A stretch of DNA of 64,000 bases from positions 62,001 through 126,000 of IMG/VR virus record IMGVR_UViG_3300018080_000098, one strand, 5' to 3'. The stretch's first letter is position 1. Every line of letters begins with the position of its first letter. Under the pieces are notes generated by a model that did no database searches, had not been told where the DNA came from, and saw only the letters and a program-made list of their open reading frames with translations. A program made the position numbers and the translations under genes. Of this stretch, positions 8,462 through 34,732 are shown piece after piece.

Positions 8462-8825
8462 CTATCTCCTTGATCTCCTCCAGCTTCTTGACCACAGCCT
8501 CCTCCGCCTTCTTGGCCTCAGCTACTTTGATCTTCTCCTCGATGTCCGCCTTCGCCGTCTCATGCTTCGTCTTCGCAATAACGTCCTTCACGCCCTTCAC
8601 TGGACCCTTCCCCTTCAACAGATAAAGGATCCCGAAGACTCCTGCAACAGCAGCACCAATAGCAGTGATGATGCCCACCACCCACAGAAGAACTTTTTTG
8701 CCAGTAGACCCCGTAGCTTTCTTGAGGTCTTGCTTGAGCTCCTCGCTCACCTTGGGCGTATCAGCCTTCTTCTCTTCTGTTTTAGGGGTTTCTTCCGTCT
8801 TGGGAGGGGTTAATGTGTCAGGCAT
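8418..8825 (-). CDS. Putative i-spanin-like single-pass membrane protein
   Basis: One TM (VLLWVVGIITAIGAAVAGVFGILYLL) followed by an E/K-rich coiled coil; lies between the holin-like and lipoprotein genes. Confidence 0.55.
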   Translation of the reverse strand: MPDTLTPPKTEETPKTEEKKADTPKVSEELKQDLKKATGSTGKKVLLWVVGIITAIGAAVAGVFGILYLLKGKGPVKGVKDVIAKTKHETAKADIEEKIKVAEAKKAEEAVVKKLEEIKEIDDEQERLEELNKLL

Positions 8826-8873
8826 CGTAATATTCCCTTTGGTAAGGGGAGCTCGTAGTCCCCCAGAGAGCCG

Positions 8874-9677
8874 CTACTTATCGTTCTTGGGCTCGTCTTT
8901 TTTCTCCTCTGGTTTCTCTTCCGGCTTTTCCTCAGGCGCTGCGGTCGTCTTTGACTCACCGTTTCCTTCAGTCCGCTTGAGTCCCAGCGCAGACTCGATT
9001 ACATCACCCAAGTAGGCAGATCCCTTCTCCGCGAGCCCAGAGTCTACCAGGTACTTGTTGGCTGTCTTTATGGCCAGGTCGAGCTTCTCAGCGCTGTCCA
9101 TCGGGTTGTCTTTGAGCTTGTGAGCAGCTTCCTCGGCCTTCCCGATACCGAACATCGCCGCTTTCAAAACCATGTCGTCAACCATCTGCTTGCTCTGCAG
9201 ATTTGAAATCTTGAACTTCTTGTAGAGCCACGAAGTGAAGATGGGGATGAAGACGGTCAGGAAGGCACCTAGAAGGTAGAGAATCACCTGGAGGATCCAT
9301 CCTCCGATGACGCTACCCTTCGAGTCTTTCTTAGCCGCTGGAGCAGCCTTGGCAGGCTGAGCTGGCACCATTGCAGCAGGGGCAGCCATAGTCGGCACAG
9401 CGGCCATCGCGGGAGCCATAACTGCTGGTGCAGCCATCGCGGCAGCAGGCGCCATTACTGCAGTCATTACCGCTGGTTTCGGCGCTGTCTTCGGCTTCTT
9501 TACTGCTGGACGAGGGCGCGGTTTGGGAGCAGCTCGCATCGCAGGAGCTGCCATTGCTGGAGCCATCGGAGCAGCTCGCATTGCAGGCGCCGGAGCTCCC
9601 ATCGGCTGCGCGTCGACTGGAGCGCTCAGTACAGCTACCAATCCTAGGGTAGCAAACATCAATGTGATCTTCTTCAT
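8874..9677 (-). CDS. Holin-like protein (LL-H-type C-terminal domain) with signal peptide and Met/Ala/Pro low-complexity region
   Basis: Signal peptide ...APVDA-Q, then AMAAP repeats, one TM, and KAAMFGIGKAEEAA...SAEKLDLA...VIESALG resembling LL-H family holins. Confidence 0.6.
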   Translation of the reverse strand: MKKITLMFATLGLVAVLSAPVDAQPMGAPAPAMRAAPMAPAMAAPAMRAAPKPRPRPAVKKPKTAPKPAVMTAVMAPAAAMAAPAVMAPAMAAVPTMAAPAAMVPAQPAKAAPAAKKDSKGSVIGGWILQVILYLLGAFLTVFIPIFTSWLYKKFKISNLQSKQMVDDMVLKAAMFGIGKAEEAAHKLKDNPMDSAEKLDLAIKTANKYLVDSGLAEKGSAYLGDVIESALGLKRTEGNGESKTTAAPEEKPEEKPEEKKDEPKNDK

Positions 9678-10704: not shown

Positions 10705-11595
10705 CTACTCCTCAGCTTCCAGTATCTGCTTTGCTACTTCAATGCCAATATCTCTACGTTTCCTTACTAGTTTAGGATCGAAGTCCAGCCCGCTTCCTAA
10801 TCCATGTGGTGGCATGAAGATGCGGATGTCTAGTTTTTTCTTTCCTTCAGCGTCGGGATGTCCAGCTTCGACAAGCTTGTTGCAGAGCAGTGCGTACTTC
10901 ACATCTCGTAGGAATATTTCAGAGCTCATGAGGTCAACGCAACGCATTCCAATGGTGGCGGCATTACGTTTAGTGCCTAACCAGTTGTCGTGAGGATCTT
11001 TCTTACCCGTTACGGGAGGGCCAGTGAGGATGACGTCTATGGCTTCACAGCCAGCATCAATAGCACTCTGAAGAGGAGTCACACAACGATAGCCACCATC
11101 CATCCAGAAATCGTCTTTAATCCATCTACCAAGTAGGTATGGTTCAAGGCCACTGGATGCGCAAACCCACTTCCACAGGTTTTTAGTATTTTGGTCGGCT
11201 TCATAGTAATGGCCACCGCCATACGCGCAACAGCCAATTCGTATCTCTCTACCCGAAGCCTGGGCCAGTTCATCTTTTACGCGTTCCTTGATTAGCTCTT
11301 GGAGAGCCTTGGAGTTGTAGAATGCGTCTTTAGCTATCAGACCAGCTAGCATTCCCCAGATCCAGCGTTTGTAGATGTCCTTATTTCCGGTGAGTCCGAG
11401 CCAGATGTCATCTAGTGCATTGACAGCGTCATCCAGCACCCCGATGGGGTACTGACTAATCATTGATGCCTGGAGAGCTCCTACGCTTACTCCGCTAACA
11501 AACTCGTACTCGTAGTTATTCCTTACCAGCTCGGTTAGTACTCCTTGGGTGAAAGCGCCTTTGCTTCCACCCCCACTCATAACAAGACCGCGCAT
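10705..11595 (-). CDS. Patatin-like phospholipase
   Basis: Oxyanion motif SGGGSKG, nucleophile elbow GVSVG (GxSxG) and catalytic DGG. Start is likely ATG 11595 (MRGLV) after GGGAGA. Confidence 0.93.
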   Translation of the reverse strand: MRGLVMSGGGSKGAFTQGVLTELVRNNYEYEFVSGVSVGALQASMISQYPIGVLDDAVNALDDIWLGLTGNKDIYKRWIWGMLAGLIAKDAFYNSKALQELIKERVKDELAQASGREIRIGCCAYGGGHYYEADQNTKNLWKWVCASSGLEPYLLGRWIKDDFWMDGGYRCVTPLQSAIDAGCEAIDVILTGPPVTGKKDPHDNWLGTKRNAATIGMRCVDLMSSEIFLRDVKYALLCNKLVEAGHPDAEGKKKLDIRIFMPPHGLGSGLDFDPKLVRKRRDIGIEVAKQILEAEE

Positions 11596-11608
11596 TATCT
11601 TTCTCCCG

Positions 11609-12589
11609 TTACTCCGATGTAGCATGCCATCGGAAGAGCATCATAAATCCGTTCATCTCACACGGTTCCGTTCCTGCGTAGTTTTTCTCTAGAACCATAC
11701 CTAGTTTCCAGTGACGGCTTATCCATTCTACTAAATATGCATCAATTTCAAACACGCCTCTAGGTGAACCTAGGCTAACGTTGCGACAGAGGTAAATGGG
11801 GGGTGGTTCTACAAGTAATATTTGGATTCTTTGATCGTACTTTCCGAGTTCTGCAGAGTCGGTGTAAATAGTTATCTCTTCAGTTCTTTCGTTTACCACC
11901 CACGGACCGGAGCTGTCTGGGATAGGAACCGCAGCAGAGAGGTCGACATCGTATTCTCCATCTCCTGCTGCTGGGATAACGATGTAATTGTACGGGGCAT
12001 CCATCAGGTTGCAGTTACCGGTGCCGCCCGGGTTGGGAGTAACAGAGCTGACTGCAAACTTTACGTAGACCGAAAAGAGATCTATTCCACTGAAGCCACT
12101 GACGGGCTTCCAATTTATCTCGCCATCGTGGAGGTAGACGCCTTCCGCAAATTGGAGTTCTATATTTTTTGCTCCAGTCTCTTCAGCAGCGTAGACGATG
12201 TGAGCAACAGTACCTTCACCACGTTTAACGGGTGGTCCCAGATCGTCTCCGCAAGAGGTATACCACGTGTAAGATCCTCCTGGAGCTGGTGTTGGGACAA
12301 TCACCTGTTTCCCATCGCTGTCGAAACGAGCGCCTTCAATTTTAACTTCTACTGCGTCGTCTTCCAGTGGCTCTCCACTATGATTAGCAACAACAGTGTC
12401 TAGTCTGTTCCTGTTTTCACCATCTAGTTCGTTCTTGAACCAGATATTGCAATCGTCGTCAACAATCTCAATGTAGTCTAAGGCAACAGTGATTTCGCTT
12501 TCCTCTATCTCCTCAGTTAAACGAGGAATGTCTACCTTGTGATTTGGAAAGTCGTTTTGGATTGAGTATGTGTATTTTGTTGCAGCCAT
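11609..12589 (-). CDS. Putative virion accessory protein (326 aa)
   Basis: N-terminal ~70 aa paralogous to 12594..13241 (YTYSI..DFP...V.I..L.EEI..S.I..AL......D.CNI.F..ELD). Confidence 0.75.
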   Translation of the reverse strand: MAATKYTYSIQNDFPNHKVDIPRLTEEIEESEITVALDYIEIVDDDCNIWFKNELDGENRNRLDTVVANHSGEPLEDDAVEVKIEGARFDSDGKQVIVPTPAPGGSYTWYTSCGDDLGPPVKRGEGTVAHIVYAAEETGAKNIELQFAEGVYLHDGEINWKPVSGFSGIDLFSVYVKFAVSSVTPNPGGTGNCNLMDAPYNYIVIPAAGDGEYDVDLSAAVPIPDSSGPWVVNERTEEITIYTDSAELGKYDQRIQILLVEPPPIYLCRNVSLGSPRGVFEIDAYLVEWISRHWKLGMVLEKNYAGTEPCEMNGFMMLFRWHATSE

Positions 12590-20613: not shown

Positions 20614-21360
20614 CTAAGCCTTCTTCAGGGGTCTACTGAGCTCCACGACCAGAATAGAAGCAGTTTTCGCGTAGCCTACTTGCTGTATAACATTCCCGCT
20701 TGTGGATGGTGGAGTGATAGTGACAGCGCCCGCAGTAGTGGCTGAAACGTAGTAGTAGTTATCAGCAGTTAAAGTAAACCCGGTCATTTCTCCTGAACGC
20801 CCAACGATACACGTGGTTGGGTTGGGTTTAGCTCGCACTATTCCTACGCTTGGCATTGTAGCAGTTGTGTTTGCACGAGCTTTGTCTACACTATCTGGTC
20901 CCGTTTGATAAACTACATCCCGAATTGCCACTGTAGCTGGGCATGCCCATTCTGTTTCTAGCAGTTCAATTTGTGGGATGGGGTCGGCTCCATCGAAGAC
21001 GTGCGTGCTGCCGTGTGCAGGAACTATTCCACCTGGTCCAATTATTACACCGTCCAGGTCATGTGTGGGTTCTCCAAACTTCTGCCTCAGTGCTCCTGTA
21101 GCATCTACCCAATAAGTGTACCCACCTAGGCGTAGTTTTGGCTCCTGGTCCCACTCCGACACGTAATCGATCACCTCATCCAGGTTAACAATTCTGATGA
21201 TGTTTTTGGTAAGGAGATCGCGTATCCTGTAGTCGTTGGTGAGCTTGTCGTATTCTACATACTGGTAGTCCTTTGTTTGGCGCGGACCAAGATTATCGTC
21301 GACTGGATTAGGTAACCCAACCGGGCTCGTCATCAACAAATTTGTGATCCGCACACCCAA
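20614..21360 (-). CDS. Putative capsid decoration/fibre protein with C-terminal DUF2190-like domain
   Basis: TTG start with AGGAG; N-terminus paralogous to 21828..23354; C-terminal DVVY...KARA....PSVGIV...GEMTG...YYVS...G.VT.TPP...IQQVG. Confidence 0.7.
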   Translation of the reverse strand: MGVRITNLLMTSPVGLPNPVDDNLGPRQTKDYQYVEYDKLTNDYRIRDLLTKNIIRIVNLDEVIDYVSEWDQEPKLRLGGYTYWVDATGALRQKFGEPTHDLDGVIIGPGGIVPAHGSTHVFDGADPIPQIELLETEWACPATVAIRDVVYQTGPDSVDKARANTTATMPSVGIVRAKPNPTTCIVGRSGEMTGFTLTADNYYYVSATTAGAVTITPPSTSGNVIQQVGYAKTASILVVELSRPLKKA

Positions 21361-21388: not shown

Positions 21389-21667
21389 TTATGCGGGCTC
21401 AGTGTACTGTACAAGAATCCCTACTGAAAGGGTGAGCTCAGCACCATCTGCTGGTACCGTAGCGATCTCCGTCCATTCAGCAGGCAACGGGTCTGGCAGC
21501 TCTATACTTCCAATCTCTGCTACAACCTCCTTCAGCATCTCCAATACAGTTTTTTCGCCATCAGCCGTGACCTCTACATCGAGACTCCCGTCACTCTGCA
21601 GACGTAGCGTAGCTGTGTGCTTCGTGTTTACACTGAACCCTCCAACATCTGCGCTCACTGGGGGCAT
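21389..21667 (-). CDS. Small acidic hypothetical protein (92 aa, MPPVSADV...)
   Basis: ATG 21667 with AAGGAG SD, inside ORF 21389..21703. Confidence 0.75.
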   Translation of the reverse strand: MPPVSADVGGFSVNTKHTATLRLQSDGSLDVEVTADGEKTVLEMLKEVVAEIGSIELPDPLPAEWTEIATVPADGAELTLSVGILVQYTEPA

Positions 21668-21731
21668 CGTTAGTCTCCTTGTGTGCCGCTTGCTGATAAG
21701 CACCCAACAGAATGTTCGATGCGCATTAGCA

Positions 21732-21817
21732 AGCAGCCCCTACTACCAGGGCTGCTCATTATGCCGCCCCTACTACCAGGGCAGCGCGTTAAACCATCCC
21801 TACTACCAGGACGGCTC
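21732..21817 (-). repeat. Three tandem hairpins, 30-nt period, invariant core CCTGGTAGTAGGG (minus strand)
   Basis: Plus-strand CCCTACTACCAGG at 21738, 21768 and 21798; the flanking arms differ between copies but each pairs. Confidence 0.9.
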
Positions 21818-21827
21818 CTCGCTAAAT

Positions 21828-23354
21828 TTAATGCGCGCACCGTGCAGGGAGCAATCGGTACGTCGCATGCGGTACCCTCCTTCTTATAGAATAAAGTGGA
21901 TACCAGGCAGATCTCATGCCCGTAAGCTTGTTTCTCCTAGCTACGTACACTTTGTCCGGGTAACTGTTGCTATCAGGATTGTACCCTACGCAACCTGGCT
22001 GTCGCTGTGCGAGTACCGAGCTGAGCTTTAACGGGCTCGGGGTTACAACGGTCCAGTGGGACCACATGTAGTGCTCGTCGTCCGTTCCAACAGTGTACCA
22101 TGGATCGGCCACCACAACATACTTTGGGCGCGACGTGTTCCTGTAAACCAGCTTGAGTGTGAGCTCATAGGTGCCCAAGTCAAAAGATTCAGTGGCAAAC
22201 GAATCGTAGTTGTATGGGTACATCAAGTAAGCACGCCAACGGCCGGACAGATCTACTGGAAATATGATTGCAGATACAGCACTCGTGGCAGCAAGCCCCC
22301 AATCACGTGGGCCAGACGGTATCACAACCTGTAGAATCCTTTTCCTGCCATACTCTTGTAGAATGAATGGGTTTCCTACAACGTAACTTCCTGCAGGCGC
22401 CGGAACTACCCAACTTACTGCTGCTGTATCCCATACAGCACCACGTGCGTTTGGAGGCACGTTTACAATAGACCCAACCTTTGGGAGCCCGTGTTTGCTG
22501 CGCACCCGAATGGTGTGCCAAATAGCGTTGTCCTCATTGACTATAGGGAGCACTCCTGTGTCGGCTTGTACAATCCGTTGAGCGAGCTCACCGTAATAGT
22601 TGGTGTAGTATTGAGGAGCGTTAAACGCACTAGAAACTCCATATGGTTGCGTGCGCCGGTTGTATTTGTATTTTCCAAGAACAGAAGCTACCAATGAATT
22701 TCTATGCACCACCTTGTGCGGGAACGAGTCACTCACATCAACTCGTTCTTCTGTACGGAAATTCATGACACTGGCAGTGTAGACACCTCCAGCAGACGGG
22801 ATTACTGTTTCCATCCAGCTGAAGAGATCGTTGATTGCGTCAAATCTTCGGTACTCCGTCCAAGTGCTTCCCGGATATTTCAAGCTCCAGTAGCAATACT
22901 TATACAGGGTGTCCCAGGTTCCCATGACGCGGTTTTCGAACCAGCTGAAAAACGCTGACCGCACCTGGGCGAACGGACGTCCTGAAACCGGTATCGTGTC
23001 TGAGTAAATCGAGACAGCTTTGTCTGCCGCACCCAACGGGTCTCCGTCTGTGTCCGACGTTGGTGTTCCATCTACCACCCGTGTAGTACCTGTAGCGTCA
23101 ATCCAGTACTCGTGGGTTCCTATTGTCAGGTGCGGAGTTTCGTTCCAACTCCCAGAAAACTGGATGTCCATATCATCCAGATTTTTTATTTTCAGTACTC
23201 CCTTACGAAGGAGGTACTGCACGTTACCATTGTTAATCAGAGAGTCGTACTCAACGTCTTGGTAAACGCGTGCTTCCCCAATATTGAATGCTTGCCCACC
23301 AACACCAGGCACTACAAGTTTGAACGAGCCTTTGTTCCAGATTTTGACTGCCAT
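21828..23354 (-). CDS. Putative virion protein (508 aa)
   Basis: N-terminal ~105 aa paralogous to 20614..21360, including YWIDATG..R...G.PTSDTDG; aromatic-rich remainder. Confidence 0.75.
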   Translation of the reverse strand: MAVKIWNKGSFKLVVPGVGGQAFNIGEARVYQDVEYDSLINNGNVQYLLRKGVLKIKNLDDMDIQFSGSWNETPHLTIGTHEYWIDATGTTRVVDGTPTSDTDGDPLGAADKAVSIYSDTIPVSGRPFAQVRSAFFSWFENRVMGTWDTLYKYCYWSLKYPGSTWTEYRRFDAINDLFSWMETVIPSAGGVYTASVMNFRTEERVDVSDSFPHKVVHRNSLVASVLGKYKYNRRTQPYGVSSAFNAPQYYTNYYGELAQRIVQADTGVLPIVNEDNAIWHTIRVRSKHGLPKVGSIVNVPPNARGAVWDTAAVSWVVPAPAGSYVVGNPFILQEYGRKRILQVVIPSGPRDWGLAATSAVSAIIFPVDLSGRWRAYLMYPYNYDSFATESFDLGTYELTLKLVYRNTSRPKYVVVADPWYTVGTDDEHYMWSHWTVVTPSPLKLSSVLAQRQPGCVGYNPDSNSYPDKVYVARRNKLTGMRSAWYPLYSIRRRVPHATYRLLPARCAH

Positions 23355-24192: not shown

Positions 24193-24807
24193 TTATAAAA
24201 TCGCTATAAACTGCGGATGAATTACCAAAGTGTTGCTGTCTTTAGCGACTCCCATTATTTGAATGGTGTCTCCTGCACCATGTCCAGAAACGTTATTCGT
24301 GATCTGCCCTGCAGTAGTATCAAGGTAGTAGGTGTCGCCAGCTACGAGGGTGCCGCTGAATACGGCAGCTTCTCCAGCGTACTGGACCGTGGCTGTAGCA
24401 ACGTCGGGTTTTGCGATACAGATTCCGACGGTGAAGTTGGCTCCTGTTGGCGACGATGCGTCTGCCTGCGAAACGGTGTTTGCTGCGGACACGTACACGG
24501 CATCAGCCACGTTCACGGTGGGCCCTGTGTAGGTACCAACGACGGCGCCAGTACTACCTCCGGCAGCGATATTTATCCACGTGTTTGGGGTGGTGGTCTT
24601 CCACCAAAGAGTGGCATTGCTTTGCTTATAGAACTGTCCGATGGGCAGGTTGTACAGCCACTGTTCACCTGGAGTCCCGAGAGGATTTACTGCGTTGGGG
24701 TCGCCGTCGTAGCCGAGAGGAGTAACCTTGTCGTTCAGCGTGGTCAACGGGGACCACGTGATGACCCGTCGCTCAATCTCAAACTGATTAAGGACCGGGT
24801 CTGCCAT
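24193..24807 (-). CDS. Putative capsid decoration protein with DUF2190-like domain
   Basis: DAVYVSAANTVSQADA....TVGICIAK....VQYAGE...LVAGDTYYLD...G..IQIMGVAK. Confidence 0.7.
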   Translation of the reverse strand: MADPVLNQFEIERRVITWSPLTTLNDKVTPLGYDGDPNAVNPLGTPGEQWLYNLPIGQFYKQSNATLWWKTTTPNTWINIAAGGSTGAVVGTYTGPTVNVADAVYVSAANTVSQADASSPTGANFTVGICIAKPDVATATVQYAGEAAVFSGTLVAGDTYYLDTTAGQITNNVSGHGAGDTIQIMGVAKDSNTLVIHPQFIAIL

Positions 24808-27116
24808 TATACAGTCTCCTCCACGGTCACATCTGTATCGTCTGAGCTCGAGCTGGTTGCTGCTGTATCGAGGATCCGCGCCGTAGTTGGGCTGCTACCA
24901 ATCGTGCCTGCGAAGCACCAGCTGTTGGGGTCTGGTGTCGTCGTGGTGTTGAACGCTCTTTTGTTGGGCAAGTCTTTGAACGCCCACTCCAGCGTGCATT
25001 TAGCGTAGTCGGCCACTGCTGCATTGAACGTCGTTTCGTTGTTGAACGCGGGCAGCGTGATCGTTCTTGATACGAATCCTCCTATAATGTAGTTGCTATC
25101 TCCTGTGTAGGTGGTGGTCACCCTGTTTGCCAGATTGGTGGCTGCTAGGGTACCATAGGCGTACGTGCCCACAGTGTCATTGTCGTGGCACTGGAGGTCT
25201 CTGGTCCACACTTCGGGTCCGCCGGTCCAGCCAGCTCCCTGCCAGGTTCCTCCGCCAGCAGGTGGGGCGGCAATAGTGGGGGCGGTGATAAGGCGCTGGT
25301 TGGCGGTTAGCGTGATTGTGTGGTTTTGCGTGCTCGTGCCATCGTTGCCGCCAGTGCGCAATCTGGTGGCGGGTTCTGTCATCTGGATTTGGGCGAAGTC
25401 GTGTGCGATGTAGACTACGACATTCTCGGTTGTAGTTGCATCGTTGGCTGCTCGGTTTGCGGAGATCTGGTAGTTCGGGCTGGTGATGTTGTAGCCACCA
25501 GCGCTGCGTGCGACTCCAGCTTTGTTTGCAGCGTATGTGTTGGGGCTGGGAATCGAGAGTTGTCCTAGTGGCGAAAAGTAAGTGATTGTGTCGAAGTTGA
25601 GGCAGATCGAGTGCACGGTGACTGTTTCGGCGTCTTTTATTGCCTCTTGTGTTGCCGGGTACGTAATATCCGACTGGTCCATCGCCCCTACTGTTGGGTA
25701 GAGGTTGTTGAGGAAGACGAGGTCCTTGCCGTCTACAGTTCCGCCGCCTGCGTTGGTATACACCCAATCCGACCAGGTTCCCGTGGAGCGTTGTACTCTC
25801 ACACGTGCTGGGAGTGCTTGGGTGGTGGTACCTCGGTCTGCGATATCGGAGGCGAAGGTATGGTTGGTTGTGGGTGCTACGCTGAAGCTCATTGCTTCGC
25901 AGGCGCCGCTGTTTTCCACTTCGACGTTGACAAACTGCAGGTCGGTTTGGATATTGATGTCGAAGGTGTCTGTAGCCTTGAGCTCGGTTTGCGTCCCAGG
26001 GTAGCCGCCCGTGAATTCGAGGGTGGTTATTTGTGGCTTTGCGTCTTCGGTCACGATGATGGTGTACGAGTTTCCATCTTGGTGTGTGGCTGTGATTGTG
26101 TACGGGAGTGTGAATCCTGTTAGGTCGGCTGTTCCGTGGTACGCTGTTGGGTCCTGGTTTGGAGAGGTACTCCAGACGACGGGTTCTCCATTCACGTCGA
26201 CGTCTGGACGGACTTGTACGTGTCCGGTGTAGGCGAAGACGTGAACCGTGATCACGGTCACGTCCGGGCTAGCAGCTGCGCTGGCTACGCGGGTTCCATT
26301 CTCCGTGAGGGTGACGTCGATGTTGCCGATGTTGGGCGTGAGGTTGGAGATGAAGATCACGCCGTCGTAGTCGGGCCCTCCCCCGCCGCCTAATGGGTAA
26401 TCGGTGGCACCGTCCCAAACGTGTACCAGGTTGTCACCAGAGTTCCAGTACATCAGACGGTCGAGCGGGTCGGTGCTGGGAGTAGTTGCTTGCTGCGGGT
26501 CGAAGTAGTAGGTGGGGCTCTTCGCAGAGGTGCCGAAGTAGCCATCTCGTGCGGTCCAGCTATCTCTACCGATGTAGACGTCTCGAGGTCTACGTAGTTG
26601 CACTCCGTCGTCTAGGGAGCCGATGTCGTAGACGGTGTCAGTGGTAAATTCTACGTGGCCACCGATGCGCAGTTGACCTTCTTGGTTGACTTCGAGGAAG
26701 TATGTGGAGCCGTCTCGAACGCGTAGGTAATCCACGGTGCCTTGAGTGGCCCAGATGTCTACGGGTCCGAGGTTGGGGTCGAGGTCGATGTAGGGGCCAT
26801 CGCGGTACGATTCCCGCAGCGGCATAAATACGGTATTGTGGTCGTGCGTGTGTGCAGTGACAGGTGTAGGGACCTGTTCCAGCGTTAGCAGAACAATGTA
26901 GAACTGGATGTCCCCTATGTACCCTTCTTGGAGTAGGCGGCTTCCCAGGAAGACTGTATTCTCAGGCAGGCCAGCGAGCGAAGTTATTCTCGCTTTTTCC
27001 TCATCCTGCAGAACGTACTGTTCTGGGTCTACGATAGGGTCGAGGGATTTCAGCGTAACGCGAACTGCGTAGACGCGTGTTGCTGACGTCACCTGGGTGG
27101 TGATTTCTACAGCCAT
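24807..27116 (-). CDS. Putative virion fibre/decoration protein with Ig-like beta-sandwich repeats (769 aa)
   Basis: Thr-rich beta-strand composition; YDIGS....RPRDVY fibre motif; N-terminus similar to 27138..27431. Confidence 0.7.
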   Translation of the reverse strand: MAVEITTQVTSATRVYAVRVTLKSLDPIVDPEQYVLQDEEKARITSLAGLPENTVFLGSRLLQEGYIGDIQFYIVLLTLEQVPTPVTAHTHDHNTVFMPLRESYRDGPYIDLDPNLGPVDIWATQGTVDYLRVRDGSTYFLEVNQEGQLRIGGHVEFTTDTVYDIGSLDDGVQLRRPRDVYIGRDSWTARDGYFGTSAKSPTYYFDPQQATTPSTDPLDRLMYWNSGDNLVHVWDGATDYPLGGGGGPDYDGVIFISNLTPNIGNIDVTLTENGTRVASAAASPDVTVITVHVFAYTGHVQVRPDVDVNGEPVVWSTSPNQDPTAYHGTADLTGFTLPYTITATHQDGNSYTIIVTEDAKPQITTLEFTGGYPGTQTELKATDTFDINIQTDLQFVNVEVENSGACEAMSFSVAPTTNHTFASDIADRGTTTQALPARVRVQRSTGTWSDWVYTNAGGGTVDGKDLVFLNNLYPTVGAMDQSDITYPATQEAIKDAETVTVHSICLNFDTITYFSPLGQLSIPSPNTYAANKAGVARSAGGYNITSPNYQISANRAANDATTTENVVVYIAHDFAQIQMTEPATRLRTGGNDGTSTQNHTITLTANQRLITAPTIAAPPAGGGTWQGAGWTGGPEVWTRDLQCHDNDTVGTYAYGTLAATNLANRVTTTYTGDSNYIIGGFVSRTITLPAFNNETTFNAAVADYAKCTLEWAFKDLPNKRAFNTTTTPDPNSWCFAGTIGSSPTTARILDTAATSSSSDDTDVTVEETV

Positions 27117-34616: not shown

Positions 34617-34676
34617 AATAGAGCCTCAGGCGTGAGTAGTTGGAAGGTGGGCTACTGCAGCTCGCAGCCCCAATCA

Positions 34677-34714
34677 AACGCGGGAGAGGGAGGTTTGTTT
34701 CCCTCTCCCGCGTT
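34677..34714 (-). terminator. Strong intergenic hairpin (15-bp perfect stem); terminator, attenuator or processing site
   Basis: AACGCGGGAGAGGGA-N8-TCCCTCTCCCGCGTT, 18 nt after the stop of 34733..37447; only a short U tract. Confidence 0.6.
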
Positions 34715-34732
34715 CTCAGAGACTACGAACTA

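What the first reader, a model, noticed from the sequence alone, without database searches (positions are those of the whole stretch)
21732..21817. Triple tandem hairpin array with invariant loop and covarying stems: candidate undescribed cis-acting RNA/ssDNA element
Seen: between two structural genes, the 13-mer CCTGGTAGTAGGG (minus strand) recurs three times at an exact 30-nt period. The arms differ in sequence, yet each copy pairs: GCCGUCC/GGAUGGU, GCUGCCC/GGGCGGC and AGCAGCCC/GGGCUGCU around UGGUAGUAG. Every non-Watson-Crick position is a G-U wobble on the transcribed (minus) strand but a C-A mismatch on the plus strand. This suggests selection on structure in the mRNA-sense strand rather than simple duplication. 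There is no long U tract, and the period is too short for CRISPR. Inference: a multivalent binding site for an RNA-binding protein (antitermination of this very long late transcript, analogous to nut/put or ANTAR dual hairpins), a processing/stability element, or a small-RNA decoy. I do not recognise it as a known family.
Basis: partly seen in the sequence, partly recalled or inferred. Interest (0 to 1): 0.85.

Follow-up and report, generated by a model that had tools for sequence, protein, structure and literature searches.

The report
Conserved triple-hairpin RNA in giant phages
Between two tail-module genes of an uncultured phiKZ-like giant phage lies a previously undescribed RNA element: three evenly spaced hairpins with identical UAGUAG loops plus a fourth long hairpin, kept in every relative found, most likely a docking platform for an unidentified factor that controls the operon downstream.

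Summary
Three exact CCTGGTAGTAGGG cores lie at a 30-nt period on the minus (mRNA-sense) strand at 21732-21816, between a 508-aa and a 92-aa gene.

The element is under strong selection. Twelve further distinct relatives, whose upstream protein falls to about 39% identity or matches only in part, all carry three hairpins at this position. Spacing is 30/30 nt in twelve loci and 30/31 in the most distant. All 39 loops keep U-A-G-(U/A)-A-G. Stems covary: 19 of 21 pairs show double changes, 95% of cells pair, and 0 of 500 shuffles reach this. G-U wobbles outnumber A-C mismatches 17 to 4, which points to the sense strand.

A fourth long hairpin, P4, is also supported by covariation. Its basal extension uses the 3' arm of hairpin 3, so the two structures exclude each other.

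Nothing matches in Rfam or in 50,697 GenBank phages. The 64-kb window holds no other copy.

My best reading, which is inferred, is a multivalent platform for an oligomeric RNA-binding factor, coupled to an H3/P4 switch that sets termination, processing or expression downstream. The partner and the output are unknown. It is a new RNA motif of a known general kind.

The parts
21792..21816 (-). Hairpin H1: 5' arm 21816-21810, 11-nt loop 21809-21799 (C-U-G-G-U-A-G-U-A-G-G), 3' arm 21798-21792.
   Evidence: Covariation: helix 1 has 7 of 7 pairs with double changes and 97.8% of cells paired. Model R1 scores it 39.1 bits.
21762..21786 (-). Hairpin H2: 5' arm 21786-21780, loop 21779-21769, 3' arm 21768-21762.
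   Evidence: Helix 2 has 6 of 7 pairs with double changes and 90.1% of cells paired. R1 scores it 37.6 bits.
21732..21756 (-). Hairpin H3: 5' arm 21756-21750, loop 21749-21739, 3' arm 21738-21732. The 3' arm is shared with the extended form of P4.
   Evidence: Helix 3 has 6 of 7 pairs with double changes and 97.8% of cells paired. R1 scores it 39.9 bits.
21690..21732 (-). Long hairpin P4: 5' strand 21732-21718, 3' strand 21704-21690.
   Evidence: RNAalifold consensus. 14 pairs, 90.4% of cells paired, 9 pairs with double changes; for P4 and its 5-bp extension counted together, slid controls reach at most 46%. In L044 an intrinsic-terminator-like hairpin with a U tract takes its place.
21685..21689 (-). 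Anti-H3 segment. It pairs with 21737-21733 (the 3' arm of H3) and extends P4 to about 19-24 bp. This pairing and H3 exclude each other.
   Evidence: 82% of cells paired and 2 pairs with double changes. The two conformers lie within about 5 kcal/mol of each other in the loci that have the extension. The segment is retained in L178, where P4 is lost, and it is the SD itself in L257. Summed over loci, p is about 0.001 against shuffles.
21665..21680 (-). Shine-Dalgarno (GGAG at 21678-21675) and ATG (21667-21665) of the 92-aa gene.
   Evidence: An SD is found 8-13 nt before the ATG in all relatives.
21828..23354 (-). Upstream gene, 508 aa. Putative tail-fibre or baseplate-module protein. Its N-terminal ~120 aa are shared with the 248-aa ORF (20614-21360). 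Its C-terminus is conserved and basic. Function unknown.
   Evidence: (PF26986 Cap_depo, precomputed). No PDB match by sequence or by fold.
21389..21667 (-). Downstream gene, 92 aa. It follows the element in every relative. Function unknown.
   Evidence: AF2 model at pLDDT 82.6 with no fold match.

Best explanation
The element is a cis-encoded structured RNA in the late mRNA of a tail-module operon. It lies between a ~500-aa fibre/baseplate-like gene and a ~95-aa gene.

Shown: three phased hairpins each display the same 11-nt loop, C-N-N-N-U-A-G-(U/A)-A-G-K, which can be read as two adjacent NAG triplets.

Inferred: these loops form a multivalent docking platform for one oligomeric RNA-binding factor. 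The factor is possibly three-fold symmetric and probably phage-encoded.

Shown by covariation and energy: the 3' arm of H3 can pair instead with a segment just after the long hairpin P4. The RNA therefore has two mutually exclusive states, H3 with a short P4, or an open H3 with P4 extended to about 19-24 bp.

Inferred: occupancy of the loops locks H3 and keeps P4 short. An empty platform lets P4 extend. The extended helix then acts as a terminator or pause site, or as an RNase III-type processing site. Either way it uncouples the amount or stability of RNA for the upstream gene from that of the small downstream gene.
For: 1. Deep conservation. All 13 distinct loci found have three hairpins at this position. 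They were reached through homologues of the 508-aa protein, at 68-39% identity among those and more distant for the extra ones, or through pattern scans. Spacing is 30/30 nt in 12 loci and 30/31 in one. By contrast, the distance from the stop codon to the first loop varies by 17 nt among the nine loci, and the gap by 135-194 nt over all 13.
2. Covariation. 19 of 21 stem pairs carry double changes, 95.2% of cells pair, 0/500 shuffles reach this, and slid registers give at most 50%.
3. Strand. There are 17 G-U/U-G cells against 4 A-C/C-A cells. The sense strand folds at -47.5 kcal/mol (z -3.5), the antisense strand at -27.5 (z -1.3).
4. Loops. U-A-G-W-A-G is invariant in all 39 loops. Loops are 97% identical within a genome and 83% between genomes. 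Lineage-specific changes appear in all three loops together: UAGAAG x3 in L254, GAUAG x3 in L044 and L255, CACC x3 in L178.
5. P4 and its extension are supported by covariation. The conformers are near-isoenergetic. The anti-H3 segment persists without P4 in L178. P4 is replaced by a U-tract terminator in L044.
6. One dedicated copy. Model R1 finds only these three hairpins in 64 kb; the next best hit scores 11 bits.
Against: No partner was identified. The two flanking proteins and 29 small ORFs of the window carry no recognisable RNA-binding domain, and the two structure models have no informative fold match.

P4 has no U tract in 11 of the 12 loci that have it, so intrinsic termination by a bacterial-type mechanism is not indicated.

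Predicted SD and AUG accessibility does not change consistently between the two conformers.

Stems are also somewhat more alike within a genome (65%) than between orthologous positions (54%). Short-tract gene conversion could therefore explain the concerted loop changes as well as co-evolution with a partner does.

The support for the 5-bp extension is moderate: 82% paired, and per-locus p values are mostly above 0.1.

There are no transcript data, because no cultured relative exists in the phage collection.
Confidence: 0.45

Rival explanations
1. A trans-acting decoy or sponge. The three-hairpin block, perhaps with P4, is cut out of the abundant late mRNA and titrates a host or phage RNA-binding protein in the manner of CsrB/RsmZ. 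Its position in the operon would then reflect only vertical inheritance.
For: It has identical loops on different stems, which is the architecture of protein-sequestering sRNAs. It lies in a presumably highly expressed structural operon. P4 could be the processing site.
Against: The anti-H3 segment, always placed just upstream of the SD, and the unbroken adjacency to the same two genes in all 13 loci argue for a local cis role. There are only three sites, in a single copy per 64 kb. The loops contain no GGA.
Confidence: 0.2
2. A factor-independent RNA. Either it acts directly on the phage multisubunit RNA polymerase or the ribosome (put-like), or it binds a small ligand (riboswitch-like tandem hairpins).
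For: It shows strong structural conservation and exact phasing, with two alternative conformers, and no binding protein was found.
Against: Three identical simple hairpins offer no obvious ligand pocket. The loops are not self-complementary in all lineages: CYGG could kiss, but CUGA, CAGA and CACC cannot. There is no Rfam riboswitch match.
Confidence: 0.1
3. A passive element: a cluster of stabilising 3' hairpins, exonuclease barriers or weak terminators, with no specific recognition.
For: It sits directly after the stop codon of a long structural gene. One lineage has a bona fide terminator straight after the array (L044). Only two gaps in the window are this structured.
Against: A passive barrier does not need an invariant 11-nt loop, which destabilises the hairpin, in 39 of 39 copies. 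It does not need exactly three copies or an exact 30-nt period either. The conserved terminator motif of phiKZ and 201phi2-1 is different (PMC10914365, PMC11512511).
Confidence: 0.15
4. A DNA-level element: single-stranded or extruded hairpins serving replication, recombination, packaging or a hairpin promoter.
For: The sense-strand DNA also folds into the three hairpins (-18.5 kcal/mol, z -2.05). G-T wobbles are tolerated in ssDNA.
Against: A cruciform needs both strands, and the antisense strand carries A-C mismatches. The element lies inside a co-directional operon, 60-150 nt before an SD. P4 and the anti-H3 pairing make sense as mRNA. No recombinase or replication gene is adjacent.
Confidence: 0.05
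5. Coding or recoding. The repeat encodes a PGSRG-type peptide repeat (ORF 21670-21840), or marks readthrough or frameshifting of the 508-aa gene.
For: A 56-aa ORF spans the array in the window.
Against: The frame of the TAG triplets relative to both flanking ORFs takes all three values among relatives. The ORF is interrupted in L035. The compensatory stem changes are not synonymous.
Confidence: 0.01

Closest known systems
Protein-dependent antiterminator RNAs whose hairpin overlaps the 5' strand of a downstream terminator (RAT with BglG/SacY/LicT; ANTAR dual hairpins) [from my own knowledge]
   Same: Sequence-specific loops sit on variable stems. The last binding hairpin shares about 5-6 nt with the base of the next, larger hairpin, so the two exclude each other.
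   Different: There are three hairpins rather than one or two. The loops are 11 nt, not ANTAR hexaloops. P4 has no U tract except in one lineage. The element lies mid-operon after a stop codon, not in a 5' leader. The polymerase is presumably the phage's own.
Lambda nutL, RNase III hairpin and N ribosome-binding site arrangement; T7 intergenic RNase III sites [from my own knowledge]
   Same: The order of parts is the same: protein-binding hairpin(s), then a long helix of about 20 bp with small defects, then the SD of the next gene. P4 in its extended form is 19-24 bp, the length class of RNase III substrates.
   Different: There is no boxA or boxB (a GNRA-like pentaloop). Cleavage has not been tested. 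P4 length varies, and in some relatives it is already 19 bp without the extension.
NAG-triplet recognition by ring-shaped attenuation proteins (TRAP with 9-11 G/UAG; HutP with 2 x 3 UAG) [from my own knowledge]
   Same: The invariant core is UAG-(U/A)AG. The only change seen (UAG to AAG in L254) keeps the AG. There are six triplets in three groups, which would suit a three-fold or hexameric protein.
   Different: The triplets are contiguous and presented in hairpin loops 30 nt apart. TRAP and HutP sites are single-stranded with 2-4-nt spacers. No TRAP or HutP homologue was detected in the window.
CsrB/RsmZ-type sponge RNAs
   Same: Repeated hairpins carry one loop motif on different stems.
   Different: The motif is not GGA. 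There are only three copies, with exact phasing, embedded in an mRNA.
Conserved 5'UTR-derived sRNA upstream of the tail gene gp182 in phiKZ, 201phi2-1, EL and PA3 (PMC11512511)
   Same: It is a conserved structured RNA in a tail-gene region of giant phages, of unknown function.
   Different: It lies at a different locus, and no sequence relation was seen: the intergenic region has no blastn match in GenBank phages. That RNA arises by premature termination in a 5' UTR.

Membership tests
Any Rfam 15 family | A covariance-model match at the gathering score, or at least a weak match. | tested here: not met
   There were 0 matches in the whole window at the gathering score, and 0 matches at E<=10 on 21600-21900.
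ANTAR target RNA | Two hairpins, each with a hexaloop carrying A at position 1 and G at position 4. | tested here: not met
   There are three hairpins. The loops are 11 nt (at most 9 or 7 if extra closing pairs form) with the consensus C-N-N-N-U-A-G-W-A-G-K.
ANTAR / RAT antiterminators | The binding hairpin overlaps the 5' strand of an intrinsic terminator (hairpin plus U tract). | tested here: inconclusive
   The overlap with the base of P4 is present. A U tract follows only in L044, and there the terminator does not overlap H3.
Lambdoid nut site | A boxB hairpin with a 5-nt GNRA-like loop, plus a boxA sequence. | tested here: not met
   The loop length and sequence differ. The boxA-like stretch in the H1-H2 linker of the window is not conserved in relatives.
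TRAP / HutP binding sites | Single-stranded (G/U)AG or UAG triplets separated by 2-4 nt, with 9-11 triplets (TRAP) or 2 x 3 triplets (HutP). | tested here: not met
   The triplets are adjacent (0-nt spacer), sit in loops, and the groups are 30 nt apart. The AG-centred conservation is similar to these sites but only as a resemblance.
CsrA/RsmA sponge or target | A GGA motif in hairpin loops. | tested here: not met
   No loop contains GGA.
CRISPR array | Repeats of 23-50 nt alternate with unique spacers of similar length; cas genes or a leader are present. | tested here: not met
   The 30-nt unit has a conserved 13-nt core and variable arms that pair with each other. There are no spacers. There are three units in every lineage.
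REP/BIME elements | Many genomic copies of an imperfect palindrome with GTAG at its 5' side. | tested here: not met
   There is a single locus in 64 kb. GTAG lies in the loop, and the stems differ between copies.
Intrinsic terminator, including the phiKZ-type motif | A GC-rich hairpin with a short loop followed by a U tract. In phiKZ the motif is CCYCCCC-loop-GGGRRGG-TTAT (PMC10914365). | tested here: not met
   H1-H3 have 11-nt loops and no U tract. P4 has no U tract except in L044.
RNase III processing site | A double-stranded helix of about two turns (around 20 bp) that is cleaved by RNase III. | not testable with these tools
   The predicted extended P4 is 19-24 bp. Cleavage cannot be tested here.
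Guanidine-II (mini-ykkC) type tandem-hairpin riboswitch | Two hairpins with ACGR tetraloops that kiss. | tested here: not met
   The loop sequence and length differ, and there was no Rfam match.

The most novel reading that the evidence does not exclude
The three hairpins are an RNA scaffold for assembly in cis. The conserved basic C-terminus of the fibre-like 508-aa protein, or the small protein encoded next, would bind the loops immediately 3' of the stop codon. Three freshly made subunits would then be held on their own mRNA for trimerisation, while the H3/P4 switch times synthesis of the downstream partner. This would make it an RNA-templated step in tail-fibre assembly of a giant phage.
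Probability: 0.07. Interest if true: 0.9.

Novelty: new variant of a known kind. Interest (0 to 1): 0.64.

Why it matters
RNA-level regulation in giant (phiKZ-like) phages is almost unexplored. These phages transcribe with their own polymerases, and any antitermination or processing factors remain hypothetical (PMC11512511).

This element is a clean, strongly covarying and sharply defined handle. It has three identical loops at an invariant 30-nt phase, coupled to an alternative pairing. That makes it suitable for fishing out an unknown RNA-binding factor and for testing how a structural operon is subdivided after transcription.

It would also add a new motif to RNA family databases, and it might serve as a compact orthogonal RNA-protein module.

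Tried and rejected
- Coding or recoding: rejected. The TAG frame relative to both neighbouring ORFs takes all values, and the 56-aa ORF is not conserved.
- Loop pairing with a nearby RNA site: rejected. The complement of each genome's own loop core was searched for in the flanks. The only recurrent hit, about 1.09 kb upstream, is the codons for Y-C-Y-W of the 508-aa gene and needs several G-U pairs. It is a coding coincidence and is absent in 7 of 13 loci.
- SD occlusion switch: not supported. SD and AUG unpaired probabilities do not differ consistently between H3-on and H3-off ensembles. L257, L178 and L254 alone show the expected direction.
- Partner among neighbours: none found. PHROGs, Pfam and NCBIfam searches of neighbours and of 29 small ORFs find no RNA-binding domain. 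The AF2 models of the 92-aa and 508-aa proteins give no significant PDB fold match. The Atlas search was uninformative.
- Wider distribution: not found. Triple-loop pattern scans of IMG/VR, JGI metagenomes and GTDB genomes returned mostly simple tandem repeats. Only this phage clade has the hairpin form. Single 15-mer hits in other viral contigs are at chance level.
- Literature: searches for the loop sequence found only let-7 microRNA papers, because GGUAGUAGG is part of let-7, a coincidence. Nothing on such an element in jumbo phages turned up.
- Other recalled resemblances: anticodon-loop mimicry, K-turn, T-loop, Smaug CNGG, the Dcm site CCWGG and kissing CYGG loops were all considered. Each fails in some lineages or does not fit the register fixed by covariation.

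Full report
**Observation.** The minus strand of the window carries three exact copies of CCTGGTAGTAGGG, at 21798-21810, 21768-21780 and 21738-21750. Tandem Repeats Finder reports the same array with period 30. Each core is flanked by arms that differ between copies but pair within a copy. The non-Watson-Crick positions are G-U on the minus strand: two in H1, one in H2, none in H3. Folded as RNA, the 94-nt minus-strand segment gives exactly three hairpins (-47.5 kcal/mol, z -3.5, 0 of 200 shuffles as stable). The plus strand is far weaker (-27.5 kcal/mol, z -1.3). DNA parameters give the same picture more weakly.

**Setting.** All long ORFs of the window lie on the minus strand. The array occupies the 160-nt gap between a 508-aa ORF (21828-23354) and a 92-aa ORF (21389-21667), which has its own GGAG and ATG.
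- The window is part of IMG/VR contig 3300018080_000098, 349,793 bp.
- A 769-aa neighbour is 42% identical to PhiPA3 gp165, so this is a distant, uncultured phiKZ-like giant phage. That protein is labelled tail sheath but is annotated as similar to phiKZ gp145/146, so the region is a tail or baseplate-fibre module.
- The 508-aa protein has no match in 50,697 GenBank phage records, none in the PDB by sequence, and none by fold (pLDDT 69).
- Its first ~120 residues recur in ~250-aa proteins such as the 248-aa ORF two genes downstream. Its C-terminus is conserved and basic.
- The 92-aa protein models as a beta-hairpin plus a helix plus an extended tail (pLDDT 82.6) and has no fold match.
- Of eleven minus-strand gaps of at least 50 nt, only this one and 34617-34732 are strongly structured.

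**Relatives.** I fetched the contigs that encode homologues of the 508-aa protein: those at 68-39% identity, and more distant ones found by a profile search, one of which matches only residues 111-508. One more locus came from a metagenome pattern scan.
- All 13 distinct loci have a 135-194-nt gap after this gene.
- In every gap there are three hairpins with the loop C-N-N-N-U-A-G-(U/A)-A-G-K.
- In 12 of the 13 gaps a further hairpin follows the array.
- Every gap ends with the SD and ATG of a 87-101-aa homologue of the 92-aa protein.
- The spacing between loops is exactly 30/30 nt in twelve loci and 30/31 in the most distant one. By contrast, the distance from the stop codon to the first loop varies by 17 nt among the nine loci measured, and the total gap by about 60 nt.
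- The frame of the TAG triplets relative to either ORF takes all three values. The element is therefore not coding and not a recoding signal.

**Covariation and strand.** The 13 arrays align with a single 1-nt gap.
- Of 21 stem pairs, 19 show changes on both sides that keep pairing.
- 95.2% of 273 cells form standard pairs, against 67% in shuffles.
- 0 of 500 shuffles reach any of the five measures, and registers slid by 1-3 nt give at most 50% pairing (the 10-locus version is).
- The closing C-G pair is invariant in 12 loci but flips to G-C in the most distant one.
- In the stems there are 17 G-U/U-G cells and only 4 A-C/C-A cells. Selection therefore acts on the sense strand, as expected for RNA.
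- All 39 loops keep U-A-G-W-A-G.
- Loops are 97% identical within a genome and 83% between genomes (permutation p < 2e-4). Lineage-specific variants occur in all three loops at once: UAGAAG in L254, GAUAG in L044 and L255, CACC in L178.
- Stems are 65% identical within a genome and 54% identical at the same position in different genomes.

The loops thus evolve in concert. Either all three must fit one co-evolving partner, or short gene conversion homogenises them.

**Fourth hairpin and alternative pairing.** RNAalifold on the 3' part predicts a long hairpin, P4 (window 21732-21718 with 21704-21690).
- P4 has 14 pairs, 90% paired, 9 with double changes.
- It has a 5-bp basal extension (21737-21733 with 21689-21685), which is 82% paired with 2 pairs changed on both sides.
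- The extension uses the 3' arm of H3, so H3 and extended P4 cannot coexist.
- With the loops held open, the two conformers differ by less than about 5 kcal/mol in the loci that have the extension. Extended P4 is 19-24 bp.
- The anti-H3 segment survives in L178, where P4 itself is lost. In L257 it is the SD itself. Summed over loci, its complementarity exceeds shuffled controls (p about 0.001), although single-locus values are weak.
- In L044, P4 is replaced by a classical terminator-like hairpin with a U tract that does not overlap H3.
- Predicted SD and AUG accessibility does not change consistently between conformers. A simple SD-masking switch is therefore not supported.

**Uniqueness and known families.**
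- A covariance model of the single hairpin finds only the three copies in the 64-kb window (37.6-39.9 bits; next best 11 bits). It finds only the arrays themselves in the relatives' flanks.
- Rfam 15 has no match at gathering scores, or at E<=10 on the region.
- The intergenic region has no blastn match in GenBank phages.
- Pattern scans of IMG/VR, JGI metagenomes and GTDB genomes returned simple tandem repeats apart from this clade.
- The conserved terminator motif of phiKZ and 201phi2-1 (a CCYCCCC/GGGRRGG hairpin followed by TTAT) is different (PMC10914365, PMC11512511).

**Mechanism.**

Shown:
- a sense-strand RNA structure under strong purifying selection;
- three identical loops at a fixed phase;
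- a covarying long hairpin;
- an alternative pairing that competes with H3.

Inferred:
- The loops are read by one oligomeric factor. An 11-nt invariant loop, exact phasing and concerted loop changes are hard to explain otherwise.
- Binding stabilises H3 and so prevents the basal extension of P4.
- Extended P4 is the active form of a terminator or pause site, or of an RNase III-type site. This would let the phage set the ratio or stability of RNA for the fibre-like gene relative to the small downstream gene.

The overlap logic is that of RAT and ANTAR antiterminators, and the order of parts is that of lambda nutL, the RNase III hairpin and the N RBS. The AG-centred triplets recall TRAP and HutP sites. 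All three are resemblances recalled from knowledge, and the element fails the defining features of each family (see the membership table). I put about 0.9 on "functional structured RNA", about 0.55 on "binding platform for a specific factor", and 0.45 on the combined statement with the H3/P4 switch.

**Rivals.**
- Processed decoy RNA: 0.2.
- Passive stabiliser or terminator cluster: 0.15.
- Factor-independent RNA acting on polymerase, ribosome or a ligand: 0.1.
- DNA-level hairpins: 0.05.
- Coding or recoding: 0.01.

**Limits.** There are no transcript data and no cultured relative. No partner was found among the flanking proteins or the 29 small ORFs of the window. Only 18% of the source genome was visible.

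Noticed in passing
window 34617-34732 (-): This is the second strongly structured intergenic gap. It holds a nested hairpin with a 16-bp GC-rich inner stem and a 15-bp outer stem (MFE -68.8 kcal/mol, z -7.1), between the 904-aa and 1574-aa genes. The upstream gene ends in tandem UAG UAG. It is probably a strong terminator or processing hairpin, and it differs in kind from the triple array.
   Followed up: partly
window 24807-27116 (-): The 769-aa protein hits PHROG 'tail sheath' and PhiPA3 gp165. That PhiPA3 gene is annotated as similar to phiKZ gp145/146, which are tail proteins of a paralogue family. The sheath label is doubtful.
   Followed up: partly
window 21828-23354 (-) and 20614-21360 (-): The first ~120 residues of the 508-aa protein recur at the N-terminus of ~250-aa proteins. 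A ~45-residue piece (residues ~65-110) recurs at the C-terminus of hundreds of otherwise unrelated proteins in the 1.8-billion-protein library. This suggests a modular anchor or adaptor domain.
   Followed up: no
window 10705-11625 (-); L044 2107-2997; L255 1596-2489: A patatin-like phospholipase gene (Pfam E 1.8e-19) lies in the structural module. In two relatives it sits directly upstream of the ~505-aa gene.
   Followed up: no
window 8475-9591: Several short tandem repeats (periods 9-27) lie inside minus-strand ORFs. They are probably coding repeats in structural proteins.
   Followed up: no
window 21670-21840 (-): A mechanical 56-aa ORF runs through the array and would encode three PGSR(G/D) repeats. 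It is not conserved in relatives and is an artefact of the repeat.
   Followed up: yes
window 21739-21809 (-), loops: The loop core GGUAGUAGG is identical to part of the let-7 microRNA. This explains why literature searches for UAGUAG return microRNA papers. It is a coincidence.
   Followed up: yes
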